The notes under the pieces: generated by a model
Seen by the model: only the letters and a program-made list of their open reading frames with translations
What the model was told of the DNA's origin: nothing
The model's database searches: none
Assembly: GCF_026571515.1 (NCBI RefSeq)
Contig: NW_026852821.1
Location: forward strand, 186,001-250,000
Direction of reading: 5' to 3'
DNA length: 64,000 nucleotides
DNA from: Ruditapes philippinarum
Taxonomy: Eukaryota
Shown here: piece after piece, positions 1,795 through 62,260 of the stretch
Position numbering within the stretch: the stretch's first letter is position 1
How the letters are laid out: each line of letters opens with the position of its first letter
Made by a program: the position numbers and the translations under genes

Positions 1795-2110
1795 AGCTGC
1801 TAATAAAGTCTGAAACCCCTTCAATGTACTTTTTATCAAGTTTTCCCATTGTTTTCAAATGAAACTAAAAATTTAACTGAATTTAACTGAAATGCACCCT
1901 CTTAAATGCACCCTCCCGCTTGAATGAAAACGTTACAGTGAAGGAACCATGATGAAAGACGTATGAACACATCTACCGATGCTTCTGAATTCTACAATCC
2001 TGAAACATTTTCGTGTCTGAAAGCTGTGTTGTGCTTGAGCCGGTGCTAGGGGGGCATGGACTATAGATTACATTTACCACTGCCGGCCATCAATTTTAAC
2101 CTGCAAAATT
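1795..2110 (+). mobile_element. Degenerate copy of the long-form structured non-coding element
   Basis: GAAGGAACCATGAT...ATGAACACATCT..CGATG and GCTTGAGCCGGTGCTAGGGGG match 10367-10475. Confidence 0.7.
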
Positions 2111-3019: not shown

Positions 3020-3283
3020 TGTAATAGCTCGGTGTGTGCAGTTTACGACAATATCAGGCACGTGGCGCTTGTCCCAGGAAAGTTTCCCGCTAGATGCCCG
3101 GTAGGCATGCGAGTTAGCCCCTACGATGATTTCCTCGTTCTATATAAACATTCTGTTCATAATAAGCCTGCCGCAGTCATTTCCTACCTTCAGGTCCAAA
3201 GCAATTACGTTGCAGATTGATAACTCAGAGTCTCAATTGGACAATAAAGTTTATTGGACAATAAAGCGAATGGGCCTTGCACA
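3020..3283 (+). mobile_element. Possible solo-LTR-like insert
   Basis: GC-richer island that starts TGT and ends ACA, with an internal TATATAAA and two AATAAA near the 3' end. No TSD seen. Confidence 0.3.
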
Positions 3284-3291
3284 AAGAATTT

Positions 3292-3422
3292 GACTAGGGG
3301 ATGTGGACGGTAACATACACTTTCATTTTCCGTTCATGAACGGGATTAATCAAATCGAACCTGCAACATTTTAAATTGTGTCGTTTTTGTAGTTCTCTTG
3401 GAATTCCTTTTGGTCTATTTTG
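3292..3422 (+). mobile_element. 5'-truncated degenerate copy of the structured element (3' domain)
   Basis: CTAGGGGATGTGGACGGTAAC...CCGTTCATGAAC...AATCAAATCGAACCTGCAACATTTT...CTATTTT matches 10468-10596. Confidence 0.75.
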
Positions 3423-6350: not shown

Positions 6351-7049
6351 CGCTATTTGTTAAATCTTTTTTTTGGTAATTTTTTTCTGTTTCTGTAACT
6401 TTGAAATAAATAATATGCAGTGCTAACATGACATGGTGTGTGTTTCAATTGTTGATAACAGTGTTCAAACAAATAGGAAATTCCGACTTTTAATATTTTA
6501 CGTCTTTGCAAACCAATAACGCTTTGATTTAAATTAGTCTTGATTTTCAATCATCTAAGTAAAATAAGAAGGGTAACACTGTTTTCAAACATTTAATTAT
6601 ATTACGCCTTTAATTATTTTTGTTCAACTCACTTCTTAACTGATCACAATTTAAAGACATAAACCAAAGATTGTATCGCTGTAGATCAAATGAAAATGAG
6701 AAAACAGACGGGTTGCGGTTACTACAATGTAATGCTTTGATTGTTTCGATTATCTTATGGTCGATTTACGAAATTGATATGACGTAGGAGGACTTATTAA
6801 TTTACTTGTATGAGTATAGCCCGACATATTTGAAAATAACATTTTTAAAGCAAAGATATAGCTTTATGCTCTTTGAGGCAATATTACCCACAGTCACTTT
6901 AATCGTACGTAAGGGTAAATATTCTAAACGAATTCTTGTTGAATTCCCTGATTCATATGAATCAATATAGGTTAACATCAATACAAAATGAATTGTCTAG
7001 ATCTAGATCTAGTCGAAACTTTTCCCTATTTCATTTCAAAGAATGCATA

Positions 7050-7225
7050 TTTAGATGTTTATTGAAATTTAAATTTTGCATAGTTTTATGATTTATTGTG
7101 AGACTGAATATGATTTTATTTCAAAGTTTTATCACAAAGTCCACTTTCTTTAGAAACAGCAGGTTCCGACCAGTCTGTTATTTCTCATAAATAAGTGGAA
7201 TAAGGAATACTCGTATAACTAACAG
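7050..7225 (+). repeat. Non-coding repeat module E (other copies ~11560-11790, ~14140-14360, ~17850-18070, ~20670-20870)
   Basis: Copies share TTGCATA(AATTTGAC)AGTT...CACTTTCTT.AGAAACAGC...AATACTC with variation. Confidence 0.75.
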
Positions 7226-8047
7226 TTAATGGTACAAGAAAAAGTACGTCACAAGTGCGCCGGTGGTTTGTTGAATTGTTTTAGATACGTTAAAAAGCAA
7301 TGAGAACAAATGGGCTGGACATTATATTAAAGTTGAACGATTATAAACTGGCTTTTTGGAAGAACAACGATTGCGTATAATGTTTTAATCTTAAAATTTA
7401 CCATGTAAAGATAATTTATATTAACTTAATTTTTCCTTTCCGAATTGGTTTTCCATCATTATAAAAAGGTCCTTAGTGCTGTTTATATGTTATTTACTAT
7501 TCAGCTTTATTTGCTTCAGTATCGTCTATAGAACATAATTTACTTGCTCTCATGTACTGATGTTCAACCACAATGCCACAACAAGACAATATAATCGGAC
7601 ACGTTGCATTATCGAAGTGAAGCTTTGATGGTATTTTCCGGATAAATCATTATAGTATATCCATGGAAAACAGTTAATGTCTATGTAAACCCCAATACCT
7701 GAATTTAATTTGTACTTTTTAATGTAAATATATGAATGGCAGCTATAAACTGAAGTGACGAGGTATCGTAATATTAAGTTTTTTCCATTTTGCCATTTTC
7801 ATGGATTTTAAAAAGTTTAACAATGCTCGAATTTAATTAGTTATACACATGAAAGACGCGCAATAATGTTATGTGCGTTATGATTGTATCGTTTTCATGC
7901 ATATAATTATAGTTTTGTAAAAGTAAATTTCTATGTTTGTTGTTATTTTCAATAGAGGAATGAACATGTACATTTAATGCACTGACCTTAGAAATATGTG
8001 TGTTCATGTAAATATTAATGTCCTATCGGTCTCGATGGTCATATGGG

Positions 8048-8343
8048 TAAAATTCTGGAAACAAAGTGATCCCTCGGAAGCATTAATCACAACAAAATTT
8101 CAAGAGAATTGCAGACTCGGTTTGATTGAGTCTGTACATGAGGGATAATGAATAAGTGCAACACCCCTCACGCCCCCTAGCACCGGCTTGAGCGGTACTC
8201 AATTTTCAACACTTAATAGTGCTGGCATCAATGATCCCGAAGGACCAGAAAATATAACAACACTGAAGTTAAGTACGGGGCAACTTTTTACAGCTGCCGA
8301 ACGGCACTTGACACCTGCTGTTGTGAAGTATAAAATTCTTGAA
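8048..8343 (-). mobile_element. Short-form (~283 nt) structured non-coding element with 13-nt terminal redundancy
   Basis: TAAAATTCTGGAA (8048-8060) and TAAAATTCTTGAA (8331-8343) flank the unit. It carries all conserved blocks of the long form and is absent from the paralogous SINE at ~16390. Confidence 0.8.
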
Positions 8344-8515
8344 TTTTAGGTTACCGGCTTCAAATCACTTGCCCATCACCTCTGTAAGCTCAAGTCTTGT
8401 CGATGACTGTAATGAAATTATCCATCTAGCTCATGGAAGGTCGATGGTTATACTTAGCTACTCGCTCGTGTCTGTTATTAAGCCCAAAGGGACACCTTAG
8501 GCCTCCTTCCACAAT

Positions 8516-8724
8516 ATAGTTTGTTTGTTTGTTTCATTTTACGCCTTTTTCCAACAGTATTTCAGTCATATAGGCGGGTAGTTTACTAACCATCGTTTCT
8601 GGAGAGTTACACCAGTACTAGACTACCTTACTTCGCGCTAAACTACCAAAGCATCTCCCGGGGATCGAACCATGCCAGAGAGGTAACTGGATTAGAAGTC
8701 ATCGACTCTAACCACGGAGGCGGT
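8516..8724 (-). mobile_element. tRNA-derived SINE, second family, with 13-bp TSD
   Basis: TSD CTCCTTCCACAAT at 8503-8515 and 8725-8737. Minus strand has B-box GGTTCGATCCC and an (AAAC)n tail. Confidence 0.85.
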
Positions 8725-8778
8725 CTCCTTCCACAATTAAAGTTGGAAAGTCGCCGTATGGCCGTTAGAGTGTTTGTG

Positions 8779-9316
8779 CGAGTCTGCAATTCTTATGTAA
8801 TTTTGTTGTGATTAATGCTTCCGAGGGATCACTTTGTTTCCAGATTTTTTTCTCTTTTCTTGTTGGTTCCAGTATTCCTGACTTGAATACTGTTGAAATA
8901 CCCTTAAGATATGTGACCTGCTTTTTAAATTTGTCTTTTGACGTCTTATCTGTGATATGCAGGCTTCATAACCTCTGACCCCCTTTCAAATTTCCATTGT
9001 ATTTGTTTAAGCCCATTGTTTTCTCGTTTAGGGCACACGCATTTTTTATGACTTGGGGACCATATGCCGTTTTCATGGAATGTCATATTGAATGTTAAAT
9101 GATAACCGCCATATGAATACATCTGCGGATGTTTAAAAATTGTACCAGTTCATGTAAAATTTTGAATTCTACTTAAACCGGTGGTAGGAGGCGTGGACGG
9201 TAGTTCGCACTTGACGTACACACGGTCCATGAACAGGCTTGATCAAACCGAGCTTGCAACATTTTCAATTTTGCAGTATTTGGCTTTCTTTGGGGATTCT
9301 TGTTTTATCTATTTGT
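8779..9316 (+). mobile_element. Composite insert: short-form 3' tail (8779-8847) fused to a 5'-truncated long-form copy (~8855-9312)
   Basis: 8779-8847 is the near-exact reverse complement of ~8050-8119. 8855-9312 aligns to ~10118-10596. Confidence 0.8.
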
Positions 9317-9717
9317 TTCACACCGACAGCACAAACAGACACACTATGAAAGCCTATTAGAATAATCACAGATTGACAATTATCTTAAATATGTCGTGGG
9401 ATACCTAAATTCTATCTGAAACACATGTTCAGGAAAGTTATTTTACAAACGACACAAATCGCATCAGAATTTTTTTTAATAAGTTTATGCTCATTCCCGG
9501 ATAATGTATTTCAATATAGAATTAGCCTGTATAAAATTTTGAATTTTTTTTTGAAAAAATTGGTTCTCGCGTAAAACGCTCAAATATAAGTTTATTCATA
9601 GTTTGCTCTTTTGCAGTAGTTAGGATTGTTAAGACCGAATTTCTCTACTCTTCCGAATGTGTTGGTGTTATATACATGATGTGACGTGAATTTGCTTTAC
9701 AAATTAAATTGATGAAC

Positions 9718-10597
9718 TGGCACTAACGTGTCACATTGAAGGTTCCATGATAACCGCCATATGAACACATCTGCGGATGTTTCAAAATTCTAAATTTTAC
9801 CAGTTCATGTTAAATGTTGAATTCTGCTTAAGCCGGTGCTAGGGGGCGTGGACGGTAACTTGCACTTGACAGTACCGTCCATGAACAGGCTCAATCAAAC
9901 CGAGCCTGCAACATTTTCAATTTTGCCGTGTTGGGCTTTCTTTAGGGATTCTGTATTTATCTATTTTATGATCACATCCGTGTTATTTGTGCCGTGTGGC
10001 GGCTGTAAAAAGTCTCCCCGTACATTTAATCAATGATGTTATATTTTTGATCCTTGAAGATCGTTCAGCACGACATTATTGTTGTGCTTGTGGTATTTTT
10101 AGTTTCAACTTTTTGGCATTTTCTAGTTGGGTGGTTCCAATATTCCTTCTTGAATAATGTTGAATCACCCTTAGGATATGTTGCCTGCTTTTTAAATTTG
10201 TCTTTTGACGTCTTATCTGTGATACGCAGGCTTCATAACCTCAGATCCCCTTTCAAAATTCAATTTTATTTAGTTCCGCCCATTGTTTTCTCGTTTAGGG
10301 CACACGCATTTTTTTACTTGGGGACCATATGCCGCTTTTCATGGAATGGCACTAACGTGTCACATTGAAGGTTCCATGATAACCGCCATATGAACACATC
10401 TGCGGATGTTTCAAAATTCTAAATTTTACCAGTTCATGTTAAATGTTGAATTCTGCTTAAGCCGGTGCTAGGGGGCGTGGACGGTAACTTGCACTTGACA
10501 GTACCGTCCATGAACAGGCTCAATCAAACCGAGCCTGCAACATTTTCAATTTTGCCGTGTTGGGCTTTCTTTAGGGATTCTGTATTTATCTATTTTT
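9718..10597 (+). mobile_element. Long-form structured element, ~1.4 tandem units (period 629 bp, 250-bp direct repeat)
   Basis: 9718-9967 appears identical to 10347-10596. The whole block is missing at the paralogous site ~16895-16912. Confidence 0.9.
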
Positions 10598-13429
10598 TGA
10601 CTAATACGAGTATAGGATTTTAAAACCAAGAGTTTGAAAGTTGTTTTTTTTTTCAAAAGAATTCTCATTTTGAATTATTAAACTTACTACGACAAAGTTC
10701 TAGAAATATGCCGAATTTCATTCGGTATAGAAATATTGTCATGAAAAAAATAATCAAACGATACACACTTCACAGATGCACCAGTGATTATTACGTATTA
10801 CAAACATAAGCCATTGTCTAAGTGCAAACATGATGACGAACATAACTTTACAGATCCAATTTATGTATTGCTATATTTATAACACATGTGTATGCTAATA
10901 ACGCTTAGATTCTAAATATTTTTGTTTAATTATCAAAAAGCTAATATTTATAGGAATATTAGTATAATTTCAATCAATGTATCATTTAGCTCTATAAATA
11001 AAATTCTGTCGGTTCATTTCATTACTTAACATGTATTTACAGGAATTATCACAGTCGTTTCAAAGAAAATCAGATAAAAGGTAGGCTGTCAATGCTCCAT
11101 CCAAGTATGTACTAAAGATTATTATCAGGGACTTCAGAAACTGCAGGTTTTTAAGTACTTACTTCGATTCAGAAACTGCAGGTTTTTAAGTACTTTCCAG
11201 CACGAGATAGTTTCGCATTTTTTATCAAATCAATAAAATTGTACTTAAAATCATTTCTGTCTAGGAATAAACGGTATTCTGTACTTGATCTTTGTCAATG
11301 TGAACTGCATTTGTATTGGCAATGACTTTTTGACTAACCAACTAGTTTCAATAAAATAAAATTGTTAAGTTTTTTAGAATGTCATTATATCATTATTCAA
11401 CATATTTTGAACAAATGGACAAAATTAATATATTATCTTCATTGAACTTCATAGCTCTTCTATTTATATTTAAAATTTGTTACGTGTCGCAATTTTTTAT
11501 TATGAAAACTACGCGTTACACATGCTATTTTGTAAAGACATTATATACTGCATTTGCGCAGACCAAAATGTGTATTGCAATTGAGATTTTGCATAAATTT
11601 GACAGTTATATAAACTATTGTGAAGATCTGACAATATTTCGAATTTTAAGCGGAAAATCCACTTCCTTTAGAAACAGCAGGTTCCAGTTAGTCTATTGTT
11701 TCCTATATATGATTTGTGGAAAATAATACAAGTCAAAATATATAGTTTCATAAGACCAAAGTCATCAATACTCGTCCGATTTTAAAATACTTTTAATAAA
11801 TTTTAAGGAAACCGACAATGTGGTTGGCTACTGAGAAAATTCCAGTCTAAGTCGCTTTCGATTATAACAAAAGGAATCCAGCTCTTGTCAGTCAGTCTGA
11901 ATAAAAAGAAATATATTCACTTTCTCCAAAACAAAACAAGTTGAAAAGCGAGGGATAATTGGATAGTTAAATCCACAATCATACGACTCCGTGTTGTATA
12001 GAAACATTCATTTGATGCTAGCGCCTATCAACAGTTAATATGTATTTGAAATACCATCAAGAGTTTTACAGAAATGTAAAGACATTCCCACTGAAAGAGA
12101 AATAAATAAATCGGAAGATAACCTTTACAACCAAGTGTCGTTTTATATCGCATAACGAAGGTAAGTAACATCGGTAAAATATTTTACTCCCGGCATTCCA
12201 GAAGACGGCTTTTTATCAACAAAAAAGCTGCTAAAAAGTTATTACATTGAGCGATGGTTTACAACAAGCTACAAGTGAAGCAATGCTGCCGTTATTGACA
12301 GATTAATTGCATCAAAAACTGCAATCATATGTCGCTGATAAGTTAAACACAAAATGAATACTAGTTTTTGCAATACCGGCTTTATTGATAAAGCGTTGAT
12401 ATGTAATAATTTGAAAAATGTTCATGCGATAGATTATATCAGTTGCTGATTTAAACAATGGTTGTTAAAAGGAATCTTAAAGTATGTGTTCCGACAAGTA
12501 TCAATATACTTCGGTTAACTGTTTCTTCAAAAGCGGATCCATAGCCAATTTACGCAATGCTTATTCTAAGAAAACTGAATATGCATAGGTCAAAGATTGA
12601 GTGCGTGTAACCGATTAATTTTATTTTTTGAATAGCTACGCTCATATTATATTTTTGGACATATGTTATATAATGTACAATCACATTAGAAGTCGATGTG
12701 TTAATTCATGCATAAAAAATCAACGATGTCCTTGGAGCAGAACTATAAAATACGCATGAAATGCACAAATTCACAGAAATTTTAATTAAATGTTAGTTTA
12801 TTGCCCCGGGAAGAGGTAACGTAATTGGAATTTCCTCATTTGCCATTCATGAGGAAAATTAAACTGTTAACAAATCGCGACTTCTATTAGATATTCACAT
12901 GCAGCATTTGGGCTATTGATGATCTTTACATGTTGTAGAAAGCAGTTGTTAATGTTTTCAAATATTTCACCGTATTTCATATATTAAGATATCTTATTTT
13001 GTTGGTCGTCCATATGAAAAAAAAGAAATTTAAAGAAAAATTACATTGTCACCGAACTGTGAACTGCGAAACAACATAAAGTGTTATATATTCCTGACAC
13101 TTATGCCATAATTATGACGATCAATGTGATATCATTTTATTATTTATTTATTTTTGAGAATTTAATAAAAACTATAATCTTAATCTTTTTGACAATGAGA
13201 AAAAGTATTATAAAAAACAATGATTTTTTTCTCTATTATATGGCGAATATCCTTTAGAAATATAGAAATAGGAGGAATTCAATGTAATCACTACGAGAGG
13301 GATTATGAAAATCTGAACAATTAAAATGTTATAATAATATATCAATTAAACATTTACTTTGATTTTGCAAATGCTCTATATTTGCTATAATTGTTTTTTT
13401 TTTTTTCGTTTTTATTTATTTATTGTTCG

Positions 13430-16600: not shown

Positions 16601-18299
16601 CAAACTCTAGAAGCTTATTAGAATAATCACGGATTATAGATTATTATAAATGTTTCATTGGATACCTTAAGTCTTTCTGAAACACATATTTACAAAAAAA
16701 ATAATTTACAAATGCTTTGTTTTAAGCTTAGTTCAGGATAATGTATTTCAACAAAGACATACATTTATATATTATCAATTTTATCAGAAAATTTGCTATT
16801 TTTGCAGTCGTTAGGATTGTTTTGTTAGAATTTCGCTTCTCTGAGTGTTGGTAATATGCTCATTCTGTGACATAAATTTGTTTTATAGATAAAATTAAAT
16901 AACTTTAATTGGATTTTAAAATCTTTAGTCTTACACTTTATACATTTTCCAAGCAAATTCTTACCCTTTTTTACTTATTAAACTTTACTACGGCAACAAT
17001 TTAGAACAATTCCGAATTTCATTCAACATAAAAGTAATTGCATTACAAGGGACCTTTATCAGCGTTTCAAAAGAAGGCAATAGACACAATTTTAGCAGAT
17101 GCATAAATGTTAGTCAAGTATTAAAAACATAAGCCATTGTCTTTAAGTTAGTGAAATCATGTTGACGAACATAGCTTTAGAGATTCAATTTATTCATTGC
17201 GATACATATAACGAATTTGTATGCCAATAACGCACGCTTAGTTTCTTTATATTTTTGTATAGTTATAATTATCAAACAACTAAGTATTATAGGGATATTA
17301 AAGCTTTTTCAACTTCTGTACCATTCAGCACTATAAATTATATTTTGTCAGTTCATTTCATTACTTACAAGGCTTTATAGGAATGCGTCAGAGATGCTAT
17401 CGCAGTCGTTTCAAAGGAAATCAGATAAAAGATAGGCTGTCAAAGCTCCATCGAAGTATGTACTTAAGATTACTATCAGATACTTCAGAAACTGCAGGTT
17501 TTGAAGTACATTCGATCACGAGTAAATTAAGCAATTTTCACTCGATCATTAGAATTGTACTTTAATTTATTGCTGACTAGAAATACAATGTATCCCATGC
17601 ATGATCTTTGTCACTGTAAACTGTAATTGTATTGGTCATGACTTTGTGACGTACCAAACATCCTCAATAAAATGAAGATGTTATGAATTTCGTTATTCAA
17701 CATATTTTGAATAAATGTTAAAACAATACATAATATTATCTACACTGAACTTTATAACTCTACTGTTAGAATTTTTGAGTTGCAATTTTGTGTTATGAAA
17801 ACTACGCATTTCACATGCTATTTTGTAAAGACCTTATTTAGTGCGTTTGCGAAGACCAAAATGTTTATTGCAATCGAGATTTTGCATAAATTTGACAGTT
17901 ATATGAATAATTGTTCAGATCTGACAATATTTCAAATTTTTAGCATAAAACCCGCTTCCTTTAAAAACAGCAGGTTCCAATTAAACTATTGTTTTCTATA
18001 TATAACGAAGGCAAAATATATAGTTACGCATAACCGAAGTCATCAATACTCGAGTGACTGTGGAATTGCTTTTAATAACTTTGAAGGAGATTCTGACAAT
18101 TGTTATGTGCACGATGTGGTGGGCTACCGATAAAACGCACAGAGTCAGTCGATATCAATTTTAACCAAAGGAGACTAGCTCTTTACAATTAAGTTGCTAA
18201 AATCAGAACTAACAGCTATGATTTCTGCATTTAATTCATTTCTAAATAACAATACAATTAAAATTTGATAGTAAGATTTTCTTCATTTAAACTGTGGAA

Positions 18300-18522
18300 A
18301 AAGGATAATCCATCGGAATCAGTAATCACAACACAATTACATGAAAATTGCATACTCGGTTTGATTCGATCTGTATATGAAAAAGGGCAACATCATTCAC
18401 GCCTCAAACACCGGTTTGAGTGGTACACAGATTTCAGCACTAGAAAGTGCTGCTATTAATGATCCTGAAATACCAGGAACTATTAAAATACTTTAGTACG
18501 GGACAATTTTTTTTACAGCTAC
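18300..18522 (-). mobile_element. Degenerate short-form structured element
   Basis: TGCATACTCGGTTTGATT...CACGCC..ACACCGGTTTGAG...AATGATCCTGAA...AGTACGGGAC..TTTTTACAGCT is collinear with 8060-8297. Confidence 0.8.
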
Positions 18523-37619: not shown

Positions 37620-37728
37620 TTTGCACTTGACAGTACCGTCCATGAACAGGCTCAATCAAACCGAGCCTGCAACATTTTCAATTTTGACGTGTTGGGCTTT
37701 CTTTAGGGATTCTTTTTTTCTCTATTTT
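37620..37728 (+). mobile_element. Young 5'-truncated copy of the long-form structured element
   Basis: TTGCACTTGACAGTACCGTCCATGAACAGGCTCAATCAAACCGAGCCTGCAAC...AGGGATTCT is nearly identical to 10489-10581. Confidence 0.9.
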
Positions 37729-61800: not shown

Positions 61801-62160
61801 TCTATACACATAAACCCTTTGATTTACTTTTTCAAAAACTTTGAGGGAATGATGATTTGCAAAGATTGTTTACGTCAATCACTCTGACCTGAGATAAGAA
61901 AATGTATGATGATTGAACAAAAGTGTTTTTTATTCTCAAATAATTTTAAGAGAGTTTATCTTGAGCATGTCAAAACAATCAAATACAACATGAAAGGAAC
62001 AACCACCATGTCACTCTGCTGGTACTTTAGCCTCTTTACTCTAGAAATACTTGTTAACAAAATAACATAGTACCTGAACACTTATTACGCTTTCTTTGCA
62101 GAACTACGTTTATTAATAATAGAATTAATAATAGTCATTCATATAAATAACGAAAATTAT

Positions 62161-62260
62161 GTGCTTTAGCTGGTTCTAGCGGTGTAAGAGATGTTGCCAT
62201 GTTACATTTCCCCTCATGGACACACTCAATCAAACCGAGTCTGCAAGTTTCACATAATTA
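62161..62260 (+). mobile_element. Degenerate 3' domain of the short-form structured element
   Basis: GCTTTAGCTGGTTCTAG...CCCCTCATGGACACACTCAATCAAACCGAGTCTGCAA matches the reverse complement of 8109-8192. Confidence 0.75.

What the first reader, a model, noticed from the sequence alone, without database searches (positions are those of the whole stretch)
8048..10597. Unassigned mobile non-coding element family with a covarying multi-helix fold (candidate new structured RNA or ribozyme)
Seen: a short form (8048-8343, minus) and a long form (monomer ~9968-10596, plus) share ordered blocks GTGCCG..GGCRGCTGTAAAAAGT..CCCCGTAC [variable insert] AAGCCGGTGCTAGGGGGCGTG [hairpin] CATG.ACAGRCTCAATCAAACCGAGYCTGCAA. 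Stems change compensatorily: CAGGCTC/GAGCCTG vs CAGACTC/GAGTCTG; GTGGACGG/CCGTCCAT vs GTGAGGG/CCCTCAT; GATC-CTTGAA-GATC vs GGTCC-TTCG-GGATC (C-UUCG-G tetraloop). A long-range helix CCCCGTAC (10016-10023) / GTGC-TA-GGGG (10465-10474) closes an insert that differs several-fold in length between forms. Most G-U wobbles work only in this orientation. There is no credible ORF. Inference: selection acts on a folded single-stranded molecule. I cannot match it to hammerhead, HDV-like, twister, pistol, group I/II intron, RNase P/MRP or SRP consensus from memory.
Basis: partly seen in the sequence, partly recalled or inferred. Interest (0 to 1): 0.9.

Follow-up and report, generated by a model that had tools for sequence, protein, structure and literature searches.

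The report
Structured tandem-inserting clam retroposon family
This is a very abundant, recently active, non-coding jumping element of a clam genome that inserts as short head-to-tail arrays and keeps several RNA hairpins by compensatory change; it looks like a ribozyme-less cousin of the 'retrozymes' that ride on Penelope-like elements, not a proven new ribozyme.

Summary
Window 8048-8343 (minus; 283-nt unit plus 13 nt) and 9968-10596 (plus; 629-nt unit) belong to two related repeat families. One 27-nt hairpin pattern has 18,649 exact copies in the 1.4-Gb genome. Copies are 97.5-98.7% identical to their majority sequence.

Every insertion is an array of 1-6 head-to-tail units with a fixed 3' end (...ATTTT). 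The first unit is cut at scattered 5' positions, and target duplications are weak. That is reverse transcription of a multimeric or circular RNA, with the anatomy typical of Penelope-like elements (PLEs).

Twelve relatives at 70-76% identity from metagenome contigs show real covariation. Two 3' hairpins reach 86% pairing against 77% in shuffles (0/500) and carry conserved G-U pairs. A 5' GUAAAA-loop hairpin and an X hairpin also covary. A tail-X helix encloses the unit junction.

There is no hammerhead, twister or other Rfam match and no ORF with a domain. The autonomous partner was not found, and RNA reads could not be obtained.

Other notes of this scan describe these same stretches of this window, and one overlapping follow-up is withheld. 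Notes on other DNA of this genome report 'twister-like' folds in PLE 3' regions. I could not tell whether they show the same motif.

The parts
8048..8343 (-). Short-form copy: one 283-nt unit plus 13 nt of the tail of a preceding unit. Its 3' end (...CCAGAATTTTA) lies at 8048.
   Evidence: the upstream flank still reads the tail of a previous unit
8105..8202 (-). 3' domain of the short copy: conserved CCGGTGCTAGGGGGCG block, hairpin 1, CATGTACAG linker, hairpin 2 (8112-8134, loop AATCAAACC), GCAA.
   Evidence: covariance model R1, 104.9 bits, E 1.4e-24; alignment A1/A3
8779..8849 (+). Second short-form insertion, 5'-truncated inside hairpin 2 (unit positions about 212-282). It forms the 71-nt inverted repeat with 8049-8119.
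   Evidence: (I1)
8864..9314 (+). Older long-form copy (84.5% identity), 5'-truncated at unit position 165, with the same 3' end (...ATCTATTTGTT).
   Evidence: R1 86.7 bits at 9162-9263
9709..9967 (+). 5'-truncated first unit (positions 371-629) of the long-form array.
   Evidence: (D1)
9968..10596 (+). Full 629-nt long-form unit. The array ends at ...ATCTATTTT (10596-10598).
9998..10017 (+). 5' hairpin with GUAAAA loop (GGCRGCY / RGUYGCC). Pair 4 covaries: A-U, G-C and G-U.
10049..10062 (+). X segment. It forms a local hairpin or pairs with the 3' tail segment at 10569-10579 (or with the tail of the preceding unit, 9940-9950).
10476..10512 (+). Hairpin 1 of the long unit: an 11-bp stem that differs between lineages, with a partly conserved loop.
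10515..10537 (+). Hairpin 2 of the long unit: a 7-bp stem with an invariant AAUCAAACC loop. Pair 4 is G-C, A-U or U-A in different lineages.
10569..10579 (+). Tail segment complementary to X. The helix it forms closes the junction-spanning domain.
37621..37728 (+). Separate long-form insertion, 5'-truncated at unit position 522, with the same 3' end.
18289..18520 (-). Old diverged short-like copy (about 72% identity).
3272..3421 (+). Old diverged long-like copy, 5'-truncated, ending ...TCTATTTTG.
62154..62250 (+). Old diverged copy of the 3' domain.
1932..2110 (+). Old decayed long-like copy.
   Evidence: 26.3 bits, E 1e-4

Best explanation
The stretch holds copies of two sister families, with 283-nt and 629-nt units, of a non-autonomous, non-coding retroposon of a bivalve genome.

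**Shown**
- New copies arise as cDNA arrays of 1-6 exact head-to-tail units.
- Each array ends at one fixed site (...AUUUU) and breaks off at an arbitrary point of the 5'-most unit.
- The template was therefore longer than one unit, either a multimeric transcript of an existing array or a circle, and it was copied from a fixed start.

**Inferred**
- The enzyme is supplied in trans, most likely by a Penelope-like element. PLE reverse transcriptase is known to start internally on multi-copy RNA next to an AC-rich stem after its GIY-YIG nuclease cuts AT-rich DNA.
- The conserved, covarying hairpins are cis-acting RNA signals. Hairpins 1 and 2, with their invariant loops and linkers, would be the protein recognition module.
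- The 3' tail of one unit pairs with the X segment of the next unit. This closes a domain of about 100-130 nt that contains the start site, the AC-rich unit start and the GUAAAA hairpin. That domain would be the initiation platform.
- The variable insert sits where an autonomous element would carry its ORF.

The element lacks the hammerhead ribozyme of retrozymes and canonical PLEs.
For: **Insertion anatomy**
- The 3' end is fixed and the 5' ends are scattered in about 70 independent arrays. Unit junctions are exact.
- No array starts at the unit boundary.
- Within-array divergence is 1.2-1.5% against 2.2-2.9% between arrays.
- Target-site duplication is weak: mean best match 3.11 nt against 2.70 +/- 0.12 for shuffled pairs.
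- There is no poly(A) or microsatellite tail.

**Abundance and youth**
- 18,649 exact hairpin-2 27-mers.
- 97.5-98.7% identity to the majority sequence.
- 10 copies in this 64-kb window.

**Structure**
- Covariation in hairpins 1 and 2 across 14 sequences from several lineages.
- The 5' GUAAAA hairpin and the X hairpin are predicted from 8 sequences.
- Conserved G-U pairs and sense-over-antisense stability.
- Cognate X-tail duplexes are -17.9 and -24.0 kcal/mol, better than non-cognate pairs (permutation p = 0.002).
- The junction-spanning domain folds with z -3.2 and -4.3.

**Literature**
- PLEs insert as 5'-truncated partial tandems.
- Naiad PLEs dominate bivalve genomes and lack hammerheads.
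- Non-autonomous Chlamys elements give multicopy head-to-tail insertions (PMC8557442).
- PLE reverse transcriptase initiates internally on multi-copy RNA at an AC-rich stem loop, after cleavage at ATT (PMC11167929).
- Tandem retrozymes are regarded as PLE-dependent (PMC7229834 and a 2026 preprint).

**PLEs in this genome**
- 531 GIY-YIG candidates.
- 1,953 candidates for one PLE-type reverse-transcriptase family, many with intact 481-codon frames.
Against: - No autonomous element sharing the 3' domain was found.
- Twelve loci of canonical C-terminal-nuclease PLEs carry no such domain in the 1.5 kb after the ORF.
- Stringent LINE/SINE pairs also share 3' hairpins and 5' truncation.
- The PLE 'tail' hallmark is only suggested: 4-5 of 31-40 long arrays (the number depends on the mapping) begin with a 31-47-nt partial unit.
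- No RNA evidence could be obtained.
- Enrichment of 5' ends in 3' arms of hairpins is modest for the short family (p = 0.008) and absent for the long family.
Confidence: 0.6

Rival explanations
1. It is a SINE-like or deletion-derived element mobilised by a stringent-type LINE (for example CR1, L2 or Nimb). That LINE's reverse transcriptase would recognise the 3' hairpins. The arrays would arise by template jumping from the 5' end of one RNA to the 3' end of another.
For: - A fixed 3' end, 5' truncation and weak target duplications are also LINE features.
- A conserved 3' stem-loop with an invariant loop is how stringent LINE/SINE pairs work (established knowledge; bivalve SINE tails derive from CR1, CR1-Zenon, L2 and Nimb, PMC11481361).
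- The long-form end ...ATTCTGTATTTATCTATTTT recalls CR1-type terminal repeats (from memory; a lead only).
- Canonical PLE 3' UTRs lack the domain.
Against: - Multi-unit exact head-to-tail insertion is the rule here, not the exception. That is a PLE hallmark and is rare for LINE-driven elements.
- There is no Pol III head: no tRNA, 5S or 7SL match.
- Runs of T inside the long unit argue against Pol III transcription.
- No array starts at the unit boundary, as jumping between defined monomer RNAs would predict.
Confidence: 0.22
2. It is a retrozyme-like element whose conserved core is a new or strongly rearranged self-cleaving ribozyme. The ribozyme would cut multimeric transcripts at the unit junction, giving monomers that are circularised and copied by rolling-circle reverse transcription.
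For: - The genomic layout is the same as metazoan retrozymes: 170-400-nt tandem units, highly self-paired RNA, mussels included (PMC7229834).
- Single-stranded linkers and loops are invariant beside covarying stems.
- The junction lies inside a closed folded domain.
- The fixed 3' end could be a cleavage product.
- Naiad PLEs lack hammerheads, yet something may process their tandem RNAs (PMC8557442).
Against: - There is no match to any of 4,227 Rfam families at E<=1 on the window stretch and the relatives, or at E<=10 on a short-form tandem array.
- There is no CUGANGA core.
- Twister-like letters are not conserved, and the Twister-P5 search of the genome gave nothing.
- Hammerhead cleavage is dispensable for PLE insertion in vitro, and internal initiation explains a fixed end without cleavage (PMC11167929).
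- No cleavage or circle data could be obtained.
Confidence: 0.08
3. It is a DNA-level repeat: a Helitron/Helentron-type rolling-circle transposon carrying tandem repeats, or an ordinary satellite spread by unequal exchange.
For: - A hairpin lies near one end.
- Tandem repeats carried by Helentrons are known in oysters (from memory).
- For the long unit both strands fold better than shuffles.
Against: - The 5' ends are scattered rather than fixed, there is no A/T insertion signature, and the hairpin lies 60-70 nt from the end.
- Arrays are short (1-6 units) and dispersed at thousands of loci with unique flanks.
- Conserved G-U pairs and strand asymmetry point to one transcribed strand.
Confidence: 0.03

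Closest known systems
Metazoan non-LTR retrozymes (Cervera & de la Pena 2020, PMC7229834)
   Same: Short non-coding units (170-400 nt there, 283 and 629 nt here) occur as dispersed head-to-tail arrays. The RNA is predicted to be strongly self-paired. They are abundant in bivalves and are thought to be copied by a PLE reverse transcriptase from multimeric or circular RNA.
   Different: The defining type I hammerhead ribozyme is absent on both strands. Circular RNA was not tested here.
Non-autonomous Penelope-like elements (e.g. MRC1 / non-autonomous Chlamys; Craig et al. 2021, PMC8557442) and the HHR-less Naiad PLEs that dominate bivalve genomes
   Same: 5'-truncated partial tandems and multicopy head-to-tail insertions, no canonical hammerhead, AT-rich insertion junctions, and very high copy number in an invertebrate.
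   Different: Similarity of the 3' end to an autonomous PLE, which is the criterion used in that paper, could not be shown. The described non-autonomous cases are from green algae. No bivalve counterpart turned up in the papers I searched.
Stringent LINE/SINE pairs with a conserved 3' stem-loop (e.g. eel UnaL2/UnaSINE1; bivalve HCD-SINEs, PMC11481361)
   Same: A covarying 3' hairpin with an invariant loop serves as the reverse-transcriptase recognition signal. Both show a fixed 3' end and 5' truncation.
   Different: There is no Pol III-derived head and no simple-repeat or A-rich tail. Insertion as exact multi-unit arrays is the rule here.
Twister ribozyme (types P1/P3/P5)
   Same: Short letter runs recall twister blocks: AAGCCGG, GUAAAAAGU and AGGGGGCG. 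Other first-stage notes of this scan call PLE 3' regions of this genome 'twister-like'.
   Different: The blocks are in a different order and split between two modules. AAGC varies among relatives (AAAC, AACC, AACU). No Rfam twister model matches. Twister-P5 found nothing in the genome.

Membership tests
PLE-dependent non-autonomous element | Insertions are partial tandems or head-to-tail multimers whose first copy is 5'-truncated (pseudo-LTR layout). | tested here: met
   About 70 independent arrays show a fixed 3' end, scattered 5' ends and exact junctions.
PLE-dependent non-autonomous element | The 3' region is similar to an autonomous PLE of the same genome. | tested here: inconclusive
   It is absent from the 3' flanks of 12 canonical PLE loci. 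Naiad-type elements and the abundant L007/L041-type PLEs could not be fetched.
PLE-dependent non-autonomous element | An optional 30-40-bp 'tail' extension at one end. | tested here: inconclusive
   4-5 of 31-40 long arrays (depending on the mapping) begin with a 31-47-nt partial unit. This was not distinguished from ordinary truncation.
PLE-dependent non-autonomous element | AT-rich (ATT-type) cleavage site, variable or absent target duplication, no poly(A). | tested here: met
   Junctions read ...ATTTT followed by the flank. The duplication signal is weak (3.11 against 2.70 +/- 0.12). There is no A tail.
Retrozyme (metazoan, non-LTR) | A hammerhead ribozyme in each unit. | tested here: not met
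   There is no CUGANGA on either strand of either unit. There is no Rfam hammerhead hit at E<=1 or E<=10.
Retrozyme (metazoan, non-LTR) | Expressed as linear and circular RNA of unit length. | not testable with these tools
SINE | A Pol III-derived head (tRNA, 5S, 7SL) with internal promoter boxes. | tested here: not met
   There is no Rfam match in the whole window at gathering scores, nor at E<=1 in 7000-12000. T-runs lie inside the long unit.
SINE | A 3' tail derived from a partner LINE 3' UTR. | not tested
   No LINE library or further genome sequence was available.
Twister ribozyme | A contiguous conserved block AAGC-P4-RUAAA-P2-GAGGG, with CCC in the P4 loop. | tested here: not met
   A regular-expression scan of all held sequence found 0 hits. 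AAGC is variable among relatives. No Rfam twister model matches.
Helitron/Helentron | Fixed 5' and 3' termini, a 3' hairpin a few nt from the end, and insertion between fixed host bases. | tested here: not met
   The 5' ends are scattered, the hairpin lies 60-70 nt from the end, and the flanks are varied.
Satellite DNA | Long homogeneous arrays at few loci, expanding by unequal exchange. | tested here: not met
   Arrays have 1-6 units and lie at thousands of dispersed loci with unique flanks.

The most novel reading that the evidence does not exclude
The conserved core (the 5' GUAAAA hairpin module plus the CCGGUGCUAGGGGGCG / hairpin 1 / CAUGAACAG / hairpin 2 / GCAA module) is a new class, or a non-circular rearrangement, of self-cleaving ribozyme. 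It would replace the hammerhead in an HHR-less lineage of PLE-dependent retrozymes. It would cut multimeric transcripts at the ...AUUUU junction and yield small circular RNAs in clams.
Probability: 0.07. Interest if true: 0.85.

Novelty: new variant of a known kind. Interest (0 to 1): 0.45.

Why it matters
If the reading is right, tens of thousands of copies of a hammerhead-less, retrozyme-like element are active or were recently active in a commercially important clam. That would show that tandem-inserting non-autonomous retroelements do not need a hammerhead ribozyme. It would also supply a compact RNA of about 100-130 nt, already mapped by covariation, as a candidate recognition and initiation signal for a PLE-type reverse transcriptase. 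Such signals are almost unknown; only one PLE has been reconstituted in vitro (PMC11167929).

The element also matters for annotation. This family makes up a visible share of 'unknown' repeats, about one copy per 6 kb in this window. Its hairpins and inverted copies could easily be mistaken for regulatory RNAs.

Tried and rejected
**Known RNA families**
- Rfam at E<=1 on 7000-12000 and on 12 relatives or loci, at E<=10 on a short-form tandem array, and at gathering scores on the whole window. Nothing relevant came up.
- Hammerhead core search on unit dimers, both strands: none.
- Twister: letter resemblances were followed up and rejected.
- ARAGORN on 8300-8800: nothing.

**Repeat type**
- Tandem Repeats Finder found nothing, because the period exceeds 500 nt.
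- Helitron and satellite readings were rejected on the end structure.

**ORFs**
- Pfam on the element's open frames: nothing.
- The 131-codon frame finds only copies of itself in metagenome proteins.

**Partner search**
- GIY-YIG loci L061-L072 lack the 3' domain.
- The PLE reverse-transcriptase fragments next to arrays in L007 and L041 are unrelated neighbours. In L041 the array sits inside the reverse-transcriptase gene.

**Other collections and papers**
- Pattern scans of bacterial genome contigs and viral contigs gave only one chance hit and none.
- A full-text search for the motifs found only a chance primer match.
- Bivalve transposon papers do not describe the family.

**5' ends and hairpins**
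- The link is modest for the short family and absent for the long family, so I make little of it.

I re-ran it with coordinates only.
Full report
**1. What is there**

The window is AT-rich DNA (about 30% G+C) from a 1.4-Gb, 15,874-contig animal assembly. Earlier notes of this scan call it the Manila clam; I did not verify that.

- At 9709-10598 (+) lies a 1.4-unit array of a 629-nt repeat (D1).
- At 8048-8343 (-) lies one 283-nt unit of a shorter relative, plus 13 nt of a preceding unit.
- Between them are a 71-nt tail fragment of the short form (8779-8849, +) and an older, 84%-identical, 5'-truncated long copy (8864-9314, +).
- A covariance model of the shared 3' domain finds 10 copies in this window at E<0.01.

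**2. Abundance and age**

- Each form gave more than 2000 first-look candidates in the genome.
- The 27-nt hairpin-2 pattern has 18,649 exact matches, against 0 for the reversed control.
- Full units are 98.7% (long) and 97.5% (short) identical to their majority sequence.
- So these are very young families with tens of thousands of units.

**3. Insertion anatomy (the key result)**

- In about 70 independent arrays from 60 loci, every array ends at the same site: long ...TTTATCTATTTT, short ...TTCCAGAATTTT(A).
- Each array consists of 1-6 exact head-to-tail units and begins at a scattered position inside a unit.
- No array starts at the unit boundary. The three apparent cases run on into the previous unit's tail.
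- There is no poly(A) or microsatellite tail.
- The target-duplication signal is barely above shuffled flanks (3.11 against 2.70 +/- 0.12 nt).
- Units within an array differ half as much as units of different arrays (1.2-1.5% against 2.2-2.9%), as expected if an array is laid down in one event.
- This rules out Helitron-type and satellite explanations.
- It means the template was longer than one unit and was reverse-transcribed from a fixed start.

**4. Structure**

*Relatives.* A pattern scan of metagenome contigs gave 12 true relatives in AT-rich eukaryote-like contigs, at 70-76% identity and with no reverse-transcriptase ORF.

*The 3' hairpins.* Aligned with the window's copies (A1, 14 sequences), RNAalifold predicts two hairpins. 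Seven of its 12 pairs show double changes. On an 18-pair version:
- 86.2% of cells pair, against 77.0 +/- 1.4 in shuffles (0/500);
- double-change cells number 26, against 10.2 +/- 2.5 (0/500);
- slid controls pair at 27-36%;
- pair 4 of hairpin 2 is G-C (5), U-A (4) or A-U (3);
- the hairpin-1 stem differs almost completely between lineages;
- two G-U pairs are conserved (13 of 14 sequences at one; 7 G-U plus 4 A-U at the other). These would be C-A mismatches on the other strand.

*Conserved unpaired parts.* The hairpin-2 loop AAUCAAACC, the linker CAUGAACAG and the GCAA that follows are invariant or nearly so.

*The 5' part.* In 8 sequences a GGCRGCY-GUAAAA-RGUYGCC hairpin (pair 4: A-U, G-C, G-U; one conserved G-U) and the X hairpin are predicted. 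A further hairpin (Y) after X is present in every lineage with different letters (read).

The long unit folds well on both strands (z -5.0 and -5.1), the sense strand being 22 kcal/mol more stable.

**5. Long-range pairing**

- In five diverged copies it shows no compensatory change (read). It is neither supported nor excluded.
- The minimum-energy folds of both units independently pair the X segment with a segment of the 3' tail.
- Between the long and short forms three positions of that helix change on both sides.
- Cognate duplexes are -17.9 and -24.0 kcal/mol, better than non-cognate combinations (permutation p = 0.002). The lineages are few and not all independent.
- In a tandem transcript the nearer partner of a tail is the X of the next unit. 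That junction-spanning segment folds into one closed domain: z -3.2 for window 9936-10066 and z -4.3 for L016:777-924 minus, against antisense z -1.5 and -2.2.
- The fixed insertion end and the AC-rich unit start lie inside this domain.

**6. What it is not**

- *Known RNA family.* There is no Rfam family at any threshold tried.
- *Hammerhead.* There is no hammerhead core.
- *Twister.* The twister-like letter runs are in the wrong order and are split between modules. AAGC is not conserved among relatives. A twister block scan of all held sequence was empty. Twister-P5 found nothing in the genome, although that search scored only 80 of about 14,700 candidates.
- *Coding.* The open frames have no Pfam domain and match only copies of themselves.

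**7. Comparison with the literature**

- PLEs insert as 5'-truncated partial tandems, often with inverted copies and a 30-40-bp tail.
- Naiad PLEs dominate bivalve genomes and lack canonical hammerheads.
- Non-autonomous Chlamys elements give multicopy head-to-tail insertions (PMC8557442).
- A purified PLE protein cuts AT-rich DNA at ATT and starts reverse transcription internally, at an AC-rich stem loop, on RNA containing several element copies. Hammerhead cleavage is dispensable (PMC11167929).
- Metazoan retrozymes are 170-400-nt tandem units with hammerheads. They are expressed as self-paired circular RNAs in mussels and are thought to be PLE-dependent (PMC7229834 and a 2026 preprint).
- The present family has the retrozyme/PLE anatomy without the hammerhead.

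**8. The missing piece**

I could not identify the autonomous partner.
- Twelve loci of canonical PLEs with a C-terminal GIY-YIG nuclease lack the 3' domain.
- A different PLE-type reverse-transcriptase family is very abundant (1,953 candidates, many with 481-codon open frames).
- The two copies of that family next to arrays are chance neighbours.
- RNA evidence could not be obtained.

For these reasons I hold the PLE assignment at about 0.55-0.6, a LINE partner at about 0.2, and a hidden new ribozyme at under 0.1.

**9. Verdict**

But it belongs to a known kind of system, namely non-autonomous elements copied from multimeric RNA by a PLE-like reverse transcriptase. Its conserved fold is best read as a recognition and initiation signal. 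It is a new variant (hammerhead-less, in bivalves, with a mapped fold) rather than something categorically new.

Noticed in passing
window 8520-8720 (minus strand): The sequence between the two inverted short-form fragments looks like a tRNA-derived SINE. It has a GGTTCGATCCC-type B box when read on the minus strand and a TTTG repeat at one end. ARAGORN and Rfam call nothing there. The same element is a target in L027 (flanks).
   Followed up: partly
L007:2950-3315 (+) and L041:1100-3296 (+); genome-wide hits: A PLE-type reverse-transcriptase family (GxPMGTNCAP...RYLDDIF, 35% identical to a canonical PLE reverse transcriptase) has about 1,950 first-look candidates. Many have identical 481-codon open frames, so a Penelope-like element looks recently active in this genome.
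   Followed up: partly
L061-L066, L070 (e.g. L063:331-1776 and 1647-2396): Canonical PLE copies with a C-terminal GIY-YIG domain are followed, in an overlapping frame, by a second open frame of 220-250 codons. That frame carries a C2H2-like motif (...CDWCQKLLARRDSLKRHSKK...), which is unusual for single-ORF PLEs.
   Followed up: no
L018:547-2286, L038, L027:2846-3191: There are chimeric copies: short unit 1-133, then long unit from position 8 or 15 to 629, then short unit 135-295. The same short-form breakpoint is used at independent loci. This could be repeated insertion at one preferred site or template switching between the two RNAs.
   Followed up: partly
L005:1012-1814; L078 and L080 (metagenome contigs): Tail-to-tail inverted pairs of copies, with 3' ends facing each other 17 nt apart (L005) or about 500 nt apart (L078/L080). 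Inverted arrangements are a known PLE trait, although there the inverted copy is described at the 5' side.
   Followed up: no
window 11133-11195: An exact 28-nt direct repeat spaced 35 nt apart (TTCAGAAACTGCAGGTTTTTAAGTACTT twice), just downstream of the element (D10).
   Followed up: no
L058:13-3082 (+): A short-form array of five units sits inside a BEL/Pao- or Gypsy-like LTR retrotransposon polyprotein, with integrase core and DUF5641 matches after the array.
   Followed up: no
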